A stretch of DNA of 63,753 bases, the filler included, from Octopus bimaculoides (Eukaryota), in NCBI RefSeq assembly GCF_001194135.2. It is 6 parts of 5 records of this genome, joined end to end, with 100 filler letters (N's around TTAATTAATTAA, not from the genome) between each part and the next. Parts side by side here need not be neighbours in the genome. Positions count along the whole stretch, not along the records: positions 1 to 26,541 come from NC_068981.1; 5 more parts are not named here. One strand, given 5' to 3'. Below, piece by piece: positions 11,365 through 24,915 of the stretch (the stretch's first letter is position 1; each line of letters begins with the position of its first letter). Both the position numbers and the translations under genes were made by a program. The notes under the pieces were generated by a model. That model searched no databases. It was given only the letters and a program-made list of their open reading frames with translations, and had not been told where the DNA came from.

Positions 11365-11775
11365 GGCGCAGGAGTGACTGTGTGATAAGTAACTCGCTTA
11401 CCAACCACATGGTTCCGGGTTCAGTCCCACTTCGTTGCACCTTGGACAAGTGTCTTCTACTATAGCCTCGGGCCGACCAAAGCCTTGTGAGTGGATTTGG
11501 TAGACGGAAACTGAAAGAAGCCCGCCGTATATATGTGTATATATATGTGTGTGTGTATGTGTTTGTGTGTCTGTGTTTGTCCCTCCAACATCGCTTGACA
11601 ACCGATGCTGGTGTGTTTACGTCCCCGTAACCTAGCGGTTCGACAAAAGTGACCGATAGAATAAGTACTAGGCTTACAAAGAATAAGTCCTGAGGTCGAT
11701 TTGCTCGACTAAAGACGGTGCTCCAACACGGCCGCAGTCAAAATGACATGAAACAAGTAAAAGAATAAGAGAATA
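11365..11775 (+). mobile_element. SINE family A, full-length reference copy (tRNA-derived head, central (TA)/(TG) tract, hairpin tail)
   Basis: Degenerate A-box region (gagtgactgtgtgataag); B-box gggttcagtcc; MIR/CORE-like caccttggacaagtgtctt; tail cggccgcagtcaaaatgac..aaaagaata. Confidence 0.9.
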
Positions 11776-12514
11776 TGTATATAAATACACACGCGCGCGC
11801 GCCCACGCACACACGCATTGCAGTAATTAAATAAAATAAACAAACAGAAATTAGGAGGAGATTAGTGGAGTGGATTATTACGGTGGTCTAATCTCTCACA
11901 AAACCCGCAGCTCTGCAAACGTAAAACAGGATTTTCTTATCAAATGCCTACAAATCACAAAATAACCCAGAATACATAAAGAGACCGGAGCTATTAAGCA
12001 ATAAAGAAGCTGATACCTACCGGTGGTTGTTCTGTCTCGACAACCTCCATTTCGCTACTGCTTCCCCCATCACAACTAAGATCCCTTTCTCTTCCCTCCA
12101 TCTTAAATTTTAGACCCTGCTTCCCACCCTCGCTCTACGTCGCTCCATTTCCTTCCACCGTTTGCCATTATTTCGCAGTCAGAGTTGTTAGAATTCTTAT
12201 AAACATATATTTATAGCTGGTGTAAATAACGTTTTGTGAGCCATCACGATAGGGTCAGCTCTAAAGTGTGACTATAAAGGTAGACGGTTGTGATTATAAG
12301 CGAAGTTAATTCACATAGTCACAAAGTTTTTCCATATTTTATTTCTTTCATTCTTTTGATATCTCATTGGGTGGCGGTCATACTGGAGCACTGTCTAGAT
12401 ATAAATATCCTAATTCTTCTACCTTTATAGTCAGAAGAAAAGTTAGGAAAGTGATTCTAAGCGAAGTTAATTCTTTTGGTCACAAAGTTAATCATGTGTT
12501 ATTCTTTTATTCAT

Positions 12515-12870
12515 TTAATTATTTCAGTCATTAGATTGTGGCCATGCTGGGGCATCGTCTCGAAGGGGTTCAGCCAATCAAAACCACCCCAGTTCTTTTT
12601 CTTTTATTATTTTATTTGTTTCAGTCATTTGACTGCGGCCATGCTGGAGCACCGCCTTTAGTCGAGCAAATCGACGTCAGGACTTATTCTTTGTAAGCCT
12701 AGTACTTATTCTATCGGTCTCTTTCGCCGAATCGCTATTTTTACGGGGACGTAAACATACCAGCATCGGTTGTTAAGCGATGTTGGAGGGACAAACACTC
12801 ACACACACACACACACGCGCGCATATATAGCTGAAGACACTTGCCCGAGGTGCCACGCAGTGGGACATTT
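12515..12870 (-). mobile_element. SINE family A fragments (two tails, body and partial head)
   Basis: Reverse-complement match to the family-A tail at about 12525-12565 and 12615-12660, and to the body. Confidence 0.85.
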
Positions 12871-19378: not shown

Positions 19379-19718
19379 GGCGCAGGAGTGGTTGTATGGC
19401 AAGTAGCTTGCTTACCAACCACATGGTTCCGGGTTCAGTCCCACTGGATGACACCTTGGGCAAATGTCTTCTACTATAGCCTCGGGCCGACCAAAGCCTT
19501 GTGAGTGGATTTGGTAGACGGAAACTGAAAGAAGCCCTTCGTATATATATATATGTATGTATGTGTGTGTGTCCCCAACATCGCTTGACAACCGATGCTG
19601 GTGTGTTTACGTCCCCGTAACTTAGCGGTTCGGCAAAAGAGACCGATAGAATAAGTACTAGGCTTCCAAAGAATAAGTCCTGGGGTCGACTTGCTCGACT
19701 AAAGGCGATGCTCCAGCA
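19379..19718 (+). mobile_element. SINE family A, 3'-truncated
   Basis: Close match to 11365-11775 up to ctccagcat. Confidence 0.9.
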
Positions 19719-19809
19719 TTATTATTTGGGTCCATATGTGTGTGTGCGCGCGGCGATTGATAAGCTAATTATTCGCTTTATACACAAGTAAACTTATTTC
19801 AGTGGATAG

Positions 19810-22420: not shown

Positions 22421-22624
22421 CGGCAAGCTCAACGTAGAATTTCGCAGGTGAGGTGTTCAGCAAGGCTCGGTTATCATTCCCCTCCTAAACAGGTTTTAAT
22501 GCGAGGATTTAGATGAGCTGTACGTAGAAACAACCCTATGGCAATAACCAAGTTCTCGCAGAGGAATCTCTCGAAGAAATTTTAAACCGAAATGCAAAAC
22601 AAAGTTTATTATTTTTTTAATTCT

Positions 22625-22840
22625 TTTATTTCTTTATTAGTTTCAGTCATTTTGACTGCGGCCATGCTGGAACAACGCCTTTAATCGAACAAATCGCCCC
22701 CCGCCTCCAGGACGGACTTGTTCTTTGTAAGCCTAGTACTTATTCTATTAGTCCCTTTTGCCGAACTGCTAGTTTACGGGGACGTAGACTCACCAACATC
22801 GGTTGTCGAGTGATGGTGGGGAGACAAACACAGACGCACA
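22625..22840 (-). mobile_element. SINE family A, 3' half
   Basis: tttcagtcattttgactgcggccatgctgg..gtaagcctagtact..accaacatcggttgtc. Confidence 0.85.
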
Positions 22841-22975
22841 AATACATACATACATACATACATACATACATACATGTGTGTGTGTGTGTGTTTAGAGAGT
22901 TTTTGAAGTGATGTACAGATATTGTATATTGAAAACAACAAGGTAGTCAGAATGTTGGCCAATTATATATGTATG

Positions 22976-24115: not shown

Positions 24116-24392
24116 ATTCGTAGCCACTTCGACATCCCTCTTCATTCGAACGGACTCTACTGCGATTTTTTAACCCCGAGAGGACATCTCCTCTAGCTAG
24201 TTAACGATGCAAAACTGCATCCGATAAATTGCGAGCAGGGGAGTGAACCCCATACCAATTTCTAGCAAGTAGACCAGTCCTAGTTTCGTGCAGCTCTGCA
24301 TCGTTAGCCAGCTGCTGGAGATGTCCTCTTGGGGTTAAAAAATCGCAATAGAGTTCGTTCGAACGGACAGCCATGTTGAAGTTGCGACGAAT
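24116..24392. mobile_element. MITE/foldback element with about 95-bp imperfect terminal inverted repeats
   Basis: gactctactgcgattttttaaccccgagaggacatctcc pairs with ggagatgtcctcttggggttaaaaaatcgcaatagagtt, and the match extends to both ends. Confidence 0.85.
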
Positions 24393-24483
24393 ATTACTTG
24401 TCAGTACAACTACTGCGTTGATCTCTTAGAGGGATTTTAGAACGGGTGTTTTTGCTTATATATATATAAGTGTGGATGTGTGC

Positions 24484-24914
24484 TTTATGTTTTATGGGTT
24501 TCAGCCAGAGGCTGAGGCCATGCTGGTGCACCGCCTTTATTGCATCCGGGGATTTTTCCAGTATTGCTTCTGGTGAGGTAGCGAGTTGGACGTTACCGTT
24601 CTTCATTGTGCCTCCTGCCGCGATGTGGGTTCATCTTGACATTTTTTGAAGACTTCCATGTCTACACCTGGCAGACCTCGGACGTTCTGTGGTAGGGCAT
24701 TAAAAAGTTGTGGTCCCTTGAATCCCAAGCTATAACAGTATTGGGTTCGTATCCTCGATGGAGAAGATGGGACCTTTGGTACTGTGCAGTGCCGTCCAGT
24801 TCGGGGATTGTTGTAGATTTCAATTCCGATATTTGGAGTCAGACCCTCCATTATTTTCCACATGTATAGCACTGTATATCTCTCACATCTCCTCTCAGGG
24901 GAGTAGACTCCCAG

Positions 24915-24915
<1 letters not shown>
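24484..24915 (-). mobile_element. CR1-group non-LTR retrotransposon 3' end (ORF2 C-terminus + 3' UTR)
   Basis: YSPERRCERYTVLYMWKIMEGLTPN..GRHCTVP..SLGFKGPQLFNALPQNVRGLPGVDMEVFKK..DEP, matching the SLERRRERY..WKI..GPxLFNxLP..FK..DEP pattern; clade assignment is by eye. Confidence 0.75.

What the first reader, a model, noticed from the sequence alone, without database searches (positions are those of the whole stretch)
24484..24915. LINE 3' UTR matches the tail of the dominant SINE-A, with a compensatory hairpin: likely SINE-LINE partner pair
Right after the CR1-group ORF2 remnant, the 3' UTR (sense) reads TAAAGGCGGTGCACCAGCATGGCC-T-CAGCC-TCT-GGCTG-AAAC..TAAAA. The SINE-A tail (e.g. reverse complement of 12619-12660) reads TAAAGGCGGTGCTCCAGCATGGCC-G-CAGTC-AAAT-GACTG-AAAC..TAAAA. 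That is 23 of 24 identical nt, followed by a 5-bp stem whose sequence differs (CAGCC/GGCTG vs CAGTC/GACTG) while pairing is kept. Shared 3' stem-loop tails are the established mechanism by which stringent CR1/L2-type LINEs mobilise SINEs. This points to the probable autonomous driver of the most abundant SINE here.
Basis: partly seen in the sequence, partly recalled or inferred. Interest (0 to 1): 0.78.

Follow-up and report, generated by a model that had tools for sequence, protein, structure and literature searches.

The report
Octopus LINE and SINE share tail
A decayed copy of an octopus LINE retrotransposon ends in the same roughly 60-base, two-hairpin 3' tail as the commonest SINE around it, so this LINE lineage is the likely engine that copied that SINE; this is a new example of a well-known partnership, not a new mechanism.

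Summary

- **The remnant.** Window 24914->24483 (minus strand) is the 3' end of an APE+RT LINE. It holds 125 ORF2 codons, the stop TAA at 24539-24537, two hairpins, GAAAC and short A-rich repeats.
- **Match to SINE-A.** The 24 nt from the stop codon match the SINE-A tail at 23/24. No shuffle of the window gave a match.
- **The refutation test fails.** Five independent LINE copies from elsewhere all carry the same tail joined to ORF2. One of them is from Octopus vulgaris. Their coding DNA is only 65-76% identical.
- **LINE type, not SINE type.** The window's tail has the hairpin-2 variant seen in LINE copies.
- **Structure.** Hairpin 2 keeps its stem while its loop varies from 3 to 8 nt. One pair in each hairpin covaries. 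92.9% of cells pair, against 19-45% in slid controls.
- **Extent of the match.** SINE-A matches the best-matching LINE copies from the stop codon through the terminal repeats (57/63 and 54/62).

Three points remain open: the exact master subfamily, CR1 clade placement by phylogeny, and mobilisation itself. I rate it a new member of a known kind, of moderate interest.

The parts
24540..24914 (-). LINE ORF2 C-terminal remnant of 125 codons. It has one in-frame TGA at 24605-24603 and an 8-codon deletion, and is 5'-truncated at a microsatellite.
   Evidence: Translation. 62% identity to residues 851-974 of P0207, a 984-aa protein with Exo_endo_phos and RVT_1 domains. 60% identity to P0122/L009 through the last codon.
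24537..24539 (-). ORF2 stop codon TAA, which is also the first three bases of the block shared with SINE-A.
   Evidence: The frame is continuous into TAA here and in L009 and L010.
24516..24535 (-). Hairpin 1: GGC.GUGC[ACCA]GCAU.GCC. This is the sequence-conserved box GGTGCNCCAGCATGG.
   Evidence: Single-sequence fold, z = -3.4. RNAalifold gives the same structure. 18-22 of 23 positions are identical among the LINE copies, against 65-76% identity in coding DNA.
24502..24514 (-). Hairpin 2: CAGCC-UCU-GGCUG. The structure is conserved while the loop sequence and length vary.
   Evidence: Loops seen: TCT, ACT, ATAT, AACTC, GTAAACTA and GCAT in LINE copies, AAAT in SINE-A.
24483..24501 (-). Conserved AAAC after hairpin 2 (GAAAC shares its G, at 24502, with the stem), then terminal short repeats CATAAAA CATAAAG. 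This is the 3' end of the LINE copy, with no poly(A).
   Evidence: L009, L010 and SINE-A end in TAAAAGAATAAAAGAAT.
11365..11778 (+). Full-length SINE-A copy. It has a head with A/B-box-like motifs, a CCTTGGRCAAGTGTCTTC motif, an internal microsatellite, a body, and a tail at 11709-11756.
12590..12865 (-).
   Evidence: 73.6 bits.
22621..22849 (-). SINE-A copy; tail at 22684->22638.
6045..6385 (+). SINE-A copy; tail at 6314-6361. Its 5' arm is CAGCC without a compensating change, plus an indel.
19379..19719 (+). SINE-A copy cut off inside hairpin 1.
5789..5993 (-). Diverged SINE-A relative with the same tail box.
   Evidence: 72% identity; 27.4 bits.
12499..12600 (-). 5'-truncated SINE-A-like element ('SINE-B') with a related tail, CCAGCATGGCC-ACAATC-TAAT-GACTG-AAAT.
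   Evidence: 54.8 bits.

Best explanation
The window holds a dead, 5'-truncated copy of an autonomous non-LTR retrotransposon (LINE). Its ORF2 has an AP-endonuclease and a reverse transcriptase, and its C-terminal domain and 3' end are CR1-like.

The whole 3' untranslated end of this LINE lineage is a module of about 60 nt that starts at the ORF2 stop codon:
1. Hairpin 1, with an almost invariant sequence and an NCCA loop.
2. Hairpin 2, with a conserved stem but a free loop.
3. GAAAC.
4. Two or more copies of an A-rich 7-8-mer.

The abundant octopus SINE-A carries the same module as its tail. It has a tRNA-like head and a CORE-like motif. It most likely acquired the module from a member of this LINE lineage.

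Inferred mechanism: the LINE's ORF2 protein recognises this structured tail on RNA. It primes reverse transcription at a nicked target (target-primed reverse transcription), with the terminal repeats allowing slippage or annealing. SINE-A transcripts that present the same tail are copied in trans.

Shown here: the tail is integral to the LINE, is conserved above coding level, folds with covariation, and is shared with SINE-A through the terminus.
Inferred: the direction of capture, RT recognition, and that this lineage rather than a particular subfamily drove SINE-A amplification.
For: - **Chance excluded.** 23/24 identity against 0 matches in shuffles.
- **Six independent LINE 3' ends carry the tail next to ORF2.** These are the window, L002 from O. 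vulgaris OX597818.1, L003, L008, L009 and L010. In three of them the stop codon abuts the tail.
- **Tail conserved above coding level.** Coding DNA of these copies is 65-76% identical, while the hairpin-1 block is 18-22 of 23.
- **Structure.**
  - The same two hairpins come from single-sequence folds and from RNAalifold.
  - 92.9% of cells pair, against 19-45% when partners are slid.
  - The covariation score is 0.221 against 0.166 in shuffles (0 of 500 reach it).
  - Two pairs change on both sides, each with a G-U intermediate.
- **Full-tail match.** The SINE-A consensus tail against LINE L010 is 57/63, against L009 54/62 and against the window 49/58, including the terminal TAAAAGAATAAAAGAAT.
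- **Same genome.** The LINE and SINE-A co-occur in one 20-kb stretch of O. vulgaris.
- **Autonomous relative.** An intact 984-aa APE+RT relative exists.
- **Deeper conservation.** A distant relative (48% aa identity, L040) keeps GUGC-CCCA-GCAC plus a second hairpin and A-rich repeats.
- **Precedent.** The mechanism is established for other pairs (eel UnaL2/UnaSINE1 and others, reviewed in PMC3747384). Bivalve CR1/SINE tails with compensatory changes are in PMC4824008.
Against: - None of the six sampled LINE copies has the SINE-A stem CAGTC/GACTG. The closest is L002, with CAGTT/GGCTG.
- Only two base pairs covary, and the sequences are related by descent.
- The sample is small and was found through protein similarity. 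The hosts of four of the external copies are unknown.
- CR1 placement is not tested by phylogeny.
- ARAGORN finds no tRNA in the SINE-A head.
- There are no activity or age data and no experiment.
Confidence: 0.85

Rival explanations
1. The tail at 24539-24483 is a separate SINE-A 3' fragment that happened to insert next to an unrelated LINE piece.
For: SINE-A fragments, including tail-only pieces, are frequent in the window.
Against: - Five other independent LINE copies have the tail in the same position.
- The ORF2 frame runs into the TAA of the block.
- The window's tail has the LINE-type linker, stem and loop shared with L009, not the SINE-A type.
- No other SINE-A body sequence is adjacent.
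Confidence: 0.02
2. The tails are homologous, but the subfamily in the window is not the driver. SINE-A was mobilised by an unsampled sister subfamily with the CAGTC/GACTG stem, or by a different LINE that tolerates this tail.
For: - The SINE-A hairpin-2 variant is absent from all six LINE copies.
- The lineage has several diverged subfamilies with different stop-codon positions.
- The window copy is old and broken.
Against: - Hairpin 2 looks shape-selected. Its loops and one stem pair vary freely among the LINE copies themselves, so the RT may not discriminate between the two stems.
- SINE-A shares TAA-AGGCGGTGC and the terminal repeats best with the window/L009/L010 subgroup.
Confidence: 0.3
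3. Reverse direction: the LINE lineage captured its 3' end from SINE-A.
For: Template switching between SINE and LINE RNAs is known in principle.
Against: - The tail is present across LINE subfamilies that are 65-76% identical in coding DNA.
- A partial form is present in a relative at 48% aa identity (L040). SINE-A's version clusters with one subgroup only.
- The block begins exactly at the LINE stop codon.
Confidence: 0.04

Closest known systems
Eel UnaL2 LINE / UnaSINE1 (stringent 3'-end recognition; Kajikawa & Okada 2002, as reviewed in PMC3747384)
   Same: A tRNA-derived CORE-type SINE and a LINE share a 3' tail of about 60 nt with a conserved stem-loop, followed by short tandem repeats instead of poly(A). 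The tail is the RT recognition site.
   Different: - UnaL2 is L2-clade, with one hairpin whose loop sequence matters, and (TGTAA)n repeats.
- Here there are two hairpins. The sequence-invariant one is hairpin 1, and the loop of hairpin 2 is free.
- The repeats here are A-rich 7-8-mers.
- There are no functional data here.
Bivalve CR1-14_CGi with BivaV-SINE2 / BivaCORE-SINE1 (PMC4824008) and the bivalve HCD-SINE partnerships with CR1-Zenon, Nimb and others (PMC11481361)
   Same: Mollusc SINEs with a conserved central domain share 3' tails with CR1-type LINEs. The stem-loops are supported by compensatory mutations, and several SINE families use one LINE tail.
   Different: The host class (cephalopod) and the tail sequence differ. 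I could not compare the sequences themselves, because the supplement is not held.
Octopus SINEs OR1/OR2/OK (Ohshima & Okada 1994), and the 'tRNA-Core' SINEs that dominate octopus repeat annotations (PMC8967140)
   Same: SINE-A has a tRNA-like head and the CCTTGGGCAAGT motif typical of CORE-type SINEs. It occurs in Octopus vulgaris (L002).
   Different: I could not check identity with the published OR1/OR2 consensus. No LINE partner for an octopus SINE appears in the 2013 pair table (PMC3747384) or in the octopus repeat papers I could search.

Membership tests
SINE/LINE common-tail partnership (stringent type) | The SINE 3' tail is homologous to the 3' end of a LINE. | tested here: met
   23/24 in the box. 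49-57 identical of 58-63 aligned over the whole tail.
SINE/LINE common-tail partnership (stringent type) | The shared region is the LINE's own 3' UTR in independent copies, not a chance juxtaposition. | tested here: met
   Six copies from different contigs and sources, all next to ORF2.
SINE/LINE common-tail partnership (stringent type) | Conserved stem-loop supported by compensatory change. | tested here: met
   Two covarying pairs with G-U intermediates, loop-length variation, and 92.9% of cells paired.
SINE/LINE common-tail partnership (stringent type) | Both elements end in the same short tandem repeats, not poly(A). | tested here: met
   TAAAAGAATAAAAGAAT ends SINE-A, L009 and L010. Related repeats end the other copies.
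SINE/LINE common-tail partnership (stringent type) | The SINE and the LINE are present in the same genome. | tested here: met
   The window itself. L002 from O. vulgaris has the LINE tail at 10472-10517 and SINE-A tails at 7700-7745 and 10992-11037.
SINE/LINE common-tail partnership (stringent type) | The SINE has an internal Pol III promoter (small-RNA-derived head). | tested here: inconclusive
   A-box-like TGGCTGTGTGG and B-box-like GGTTCCGGGTTCAGTCCC at 11365-11430. ARAGORN and Rfam find nothing.
SINE/LINE common-tail partnership (stringent type) | Overlapping periods of activity, and trans-mobilisation by the LINE protein. | not testable with these tools
   This needs whole-genome copy landscapes and a retrotransposition assay.
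CR1-clade LINE | ORF2 with an N-terminal AP endonuclease, a central RT and a C-terminal extension; no RNase H. | tested here: met
   P0207 (984 aa, 62% identical to the window remnant) has only Exo_endo_phos, Exo_endo_phos_2 and RVT_1. RVT_1 lies upstream of the C-terminal domain in L035. The feature is shown in relatives, not in the truncated window copy.
CR1-clade LINE | The 3' end has a hairpin and short microsatellite-like repeats, with no poly(A). | tested here: met
   More distant relatives end in (ACTA)n, (GATTCAGTAA)n or (AAAAGTA)n-type repeats.
CR1-clade LINE | The RT domain groups with CR1 reference elements in a phylogeny, as opposed to L2, Rex1, Jockey, I or Nimb. | not tested
The SLERRRERY...WKI C-terminal motif resembles CR1-type C-termini only from my memory.
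CORE-SINE superfamily | A CORE central domain downstream of the tRNA-like head. | tested here: inconclusive
   CCTTGGRCAAGTGTCTTC is present at 11440-11457, 19454-19471 and 12850-12833. The match to the CORE consensus is recalled, not computed. The literature says tRNA-Core SINEs dominate octopus genomes (PMC8967140).

The most novel reading that the evidence does not exclude
One CR1-like LINE lineage, recognisable by the near-invariant GGUGCNCCAGCAUGG hairpin, is the engine behind the octopus-specific SINE expansion. SINEs make up about 11.6% of the O. vulgaris genome (PMC13282606).

On this reading, hairpin 1 is an old protein-recognition element kept even in relatives at 48% aa identity in other marine hosts, while hairpin 2 is read only as a shape. 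That would give a defined, testable RNA-protein pair for the SINE burst that has been linked to cephalopod genome and neural evolution.
Probability: 0.4. Interest if true: 0.55.

Novelty: new member of a known kind. Interest (0 to 1): 0.35.

Why it matters
SINEs are among the largest repeat classes in octopus genomes and are octopus-specific expansions. The repeat papers I could search classify most of them only as 'unclassified' or 'tRNA-Core' and name no autonomous partner.

Pinning the tail to a defined LINE lineage does three things:
- It gives a handle for annotating these SINEs.
- It allows the bursts of the SINE and the LINE to be dated together.
- It allows a standard retrotransposition assay.

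Conceptually it adds a cephalopod case to a mechanism already documented in vertebrates, sea urchins, cnidarians and bivalves. The value is therefore for annotation and comparison, not as a new principle.

Tried and rejected
- **RNA and tRNA scans.** The Rfam gathering scan of the window gave 0 hits. ARAGORN found 0 tRNAs.
- **First protein search.** The degraded fragment alone found only 2 proteins. P0001 is not on record as a gene. Profile searches were needed.
- **Tail pattern scans.**
  - IMG/VR gave 0 hits.
  - JGI metagenomes gave 0 hits for the full pattern.
  - The scan of GTDB genomes gave 24 hits, all in bacterial genomes or MAGs (many soil or freshwater types). I estimate about 17 by chance for 596 Gb, so I treat them as background.
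- **Loci that encode relatives but lack the tail.**
  - L001, L005, L006, L007, L035-L039 and L041-L053 have 55% aa identity or less over most of the query, or only short matches, and end in other repeats.
  - I read these as other LINE families or hosts, not as counter-examples.
- **L004.** It is 68% identical, but it stops in a (TG) run at about 940 and continues into unrelated sequence that looks bacterial. I judge it truncated or chimeric, so it is uninformative.
- **More copies in the window.** The covariance model found no further tails beyond those the regex and BLAST searches had already found.
- **Literature dead ends.**
  - The accession search for the host of GCA_024449705.1 and the ENA samples found nothing.
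  - Albertin 2015 is not held.
  - The MetaSINE supplement is not held.
- **Homology upstream of the stop codon.** I considered that the LINE/SINE-A homology extends upstream of the stop codon, but the alignment there is no better than noise.

Full report
**What is in the window**

On the minus strand, 24914->24540 reads as the last 125 codons of a LINE ORF2: LGVYSPERRCERYTVLYMWKIMEGL...FKKCQDEPTSRQEAQ*RTVTSNSLPHQKQYWKNPRMQ. The frame ends at TAA (24539-24537). After the stop come:
- GGCGGTGCACCAGCATGGCC (24535-24516);
- T;
- CAGCC-TCT-GGCTG (24514-24502);
- AAAC;
- CATAAAACATAAAG, ending at 24483.

The copy is dead. It has an in-frame TGA at 24605-24603, at a position that is Arg in an intact relative. 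It has an 8-codon deletion. It is cut off at its 5' side by an (AC)17 microsatellite and an assembly gap. It is the only copy of this LINE in the window.

**Check of the observation**

The 24-mer TAAAGGCGGTGCTCCAGCATGGCC of SINE-A (12660->12637) matches the LINE with one mismatch. With up to 3 mismatches it is found 5 times in the window, against none in 100 shuffles.

SINE-A occurs as six copies or fragments at 72-89% identity to the reference copy, plus tail-only pieces. The stems differ by one base pair, U-A in SINE-A and C-G in the LINE.

**Is the tail the LINE's own?**

The degraded fragment alone found almost nothing. Profiles built from the first hits found closer relatives, and I fetched their DNA. 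Five independent copies carry the same tail directly after ORF2:
- L002, Octopus vulgaris chromosome OX597818.1;
- L003, L008 and L009, ENA metagenome contigs;
- L010, NCBI assembly GCA_024449705.1.

In L009 and L010, as in the window, the stop codon TAA abuts the box (TAAGGGCGGTGC, TAATGGCGGTGC). In L008, L003 and L002 the ORF ends 25-140 nt (about 25, 50 and 140 nt) upstream of the GGTGC box.

L009 is the same subfamily as the window copy (…HQMHYWKKARVH* against …HQKQYWKNPRMQ*). It has the same linker T, the same CAGCC/GGCTG stem and a 3-nt NCT loop.

The window's tail is therefore of LINE type and not a SINE-A fragment.

**Conservation and structure**

The six LINE copies are 65-76% identical in aligned coding DNA, but 18-22 of 23 in the hairpin-1 block.

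Single-sequence folds give two hairpins for both the LINE and SINE-A, with z-scores of -3.4 and -4.7. RNAalifold on 13 tails predicts the same 12 pairs.

Pair counting on those 13 tails gave:

| Measure | Proposed structure | Control |
|---|---|---|
| Cells forming a standard pair | 92.9% | 19-45% with partners slid |
| Covariation score | 0.221 | 0.166 in shuffles (0 of 500 reach it) |

Two pairs change on both sides:
- Hairpin 1, pair 9-24: C-G in ten sequences, U-G in L008, U-A in L003 and L002.
- Hairpin 2, pair 31-44: U-A in SINE-A, C-G in five LINE copies, U-G in L002.

The hairpin-2 loop is TCT, ACT, ATAT, AACTC, GTAAACTA or GCAT in the LINE copies and AAAT in SINE-A, and L010 adds a sixth stem pair.

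So hairpin 2 is kept as a shape, while hairpin 1 (GUGC-NCCA-GCAU) is kept as a sequence. The covariation evidence is modest, with two pairs among related sequences, but it is consistent. The loop-length variation adds to it.

**Extent of the SINE/LINE match**

Homology starts at the stop codon and runs to the end of both elements. The SINE-A consensus tail matches as follows:

| LINE copy | Identical / aligned |
|---|---|
| L010 | 57 / 63 |
| L009 | 54 / 62 |
| window | 49 / 58 |

Upstream of the stop there is no convincing similarity.

**What the elements are**

*The LINE.* P0207 is a 984-aa protein with Exo_endo_phos and RVT_1 domains and no RNase H. It is 62% identical to the window remnant over residues 851-974. 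An RVT_1 gene lies just upstream of the C-terminal domain in L035.

More distant relatives end in other short tandem repeats, which is the CR1/L2 style of 3' end. One of them, L040 at 48% aa identity, keeps GUGC-CCCA-GCAC, a second hairpin and A-rich repeats.

I accept 'CR1-like' as the best label. CR1 elements are among the recently active LINEs of O. vulgaris (PMC13282606).

*SINE-A.* The full copy is at 11365-11778. It has A- and B-box-like motifs, a CCTTGGRCAAGTGTCTTC motif reminiscent of CORE-SINEs, an internal microsatellite, and the tail. ARAGORN does not call a tRNA in it. SINE-A copies occur in the O. vulgaris locus L002, so the window is from an octopod.

**Mechanism**

By analogy with experimentally tested stringent-type pairs (PMC3747384), the ORF2 protein would bind the structured tail of its RNA. 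It would start target-primed reverse transcription in the terminal repeats. SINE-A RNA carrying the same tail would be copied in trans. This step is inferred.

The sampled LINE copies do not include the exact SINE-A stem. The master subfamily therefore remains open. I give about 0.3 to the view that a sister subfamily, and not the window's own, was the driver.

**Novelty**

SINE/LINE tail sharing with compensatory stem changes is textbook. It has been shown in molluscs for bivalves (PMC4824008, PMC11481361).

I found no report of an octopus pair:
- The 2013 table of known pairs has none.
- The octopus repeat papers I could search do not name a partner.
- Repbase and Dfam could not be consulted.

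I rate it a new member of a known kind.

Noticed in passing
window 3662-3985 (+): An open frame encoding part of a T-box DNA-binding domain (Pfam T-box, E 3.4e-31). The repeats studied here probably lie in or beside a T-box transcription factor gene.
   Followed up: partly
window 24116-24392: A long inverted repeat with 104-nt arms, 83% complementary, and a 69-nt spacer. It sits about 90 nt beyond the LINE's 3' end and looks like a foldback or MITE-type element.
   Followed up: no
L002 10540-10800 (Octopus vulgaris): Tandem units of about 60 nt (…GCCGTTGCCAGCCTCGCCTGGCCCCCGTGCCGGTGGCACATAAAAAGCACCATCC…) lie directly 3' of the LINE tail. They probably belong to another octopus repeat family.
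   Followed up: no
L040 930-1010 (JGI marine metagenome contig Ga0163179_10411998): A LINE relative at only 48% aa identity keeps GUGC-CCCA-GCAC, a second hairpin (CAGU-GAUCA-ACUG) and A-rich terminal repeats. The hairpin-1 motif may be much older than the octopus SINE.
   Followed up: partly
P0001 (NCBI/UniRef 'hypothetical protein, partial [Escherichia coli]', 563-bp contig): This protein is 64-71% identical to the octopus-type LINE ORF2 C-terminus. It is almost certainly animal DNA contaminating a bacterial assembly.
   Followed up: no
window 11460-11580, 12790-12830, and other SINE-A copies: SINE-A carries an internal (TG)n/(TA)n microsatellite of variable length between its CORE-like part and its 3' body. 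This may seed many of the window's microsatellites.
   Followed up: no
L008, L003, L002 versus window, L009, L010: There are two LINE subgroups. In one the ORF2 stop codon abuts the tail. In the other the ORF ends 25-140 nt upstream of the GGTGC box, and hairpin 1 starts GGU instead of GGC.
   Followed up: partly
window 6555-6574 (-): A further B-box-like SINE head motif (GGTTCCAGGTTCAGTCCCAC) that does not belong to the SINE-A copies listed. It may be another SINE with the same head.
   Followed up: no
L004 about 940-1600 (ENA contig): The LINE ORF2 remnant stops in a short (TG) run, and the contig continues into unrelated sequence of different composition. This is probably a chimeric metagenome assembly.
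   Followed up: no
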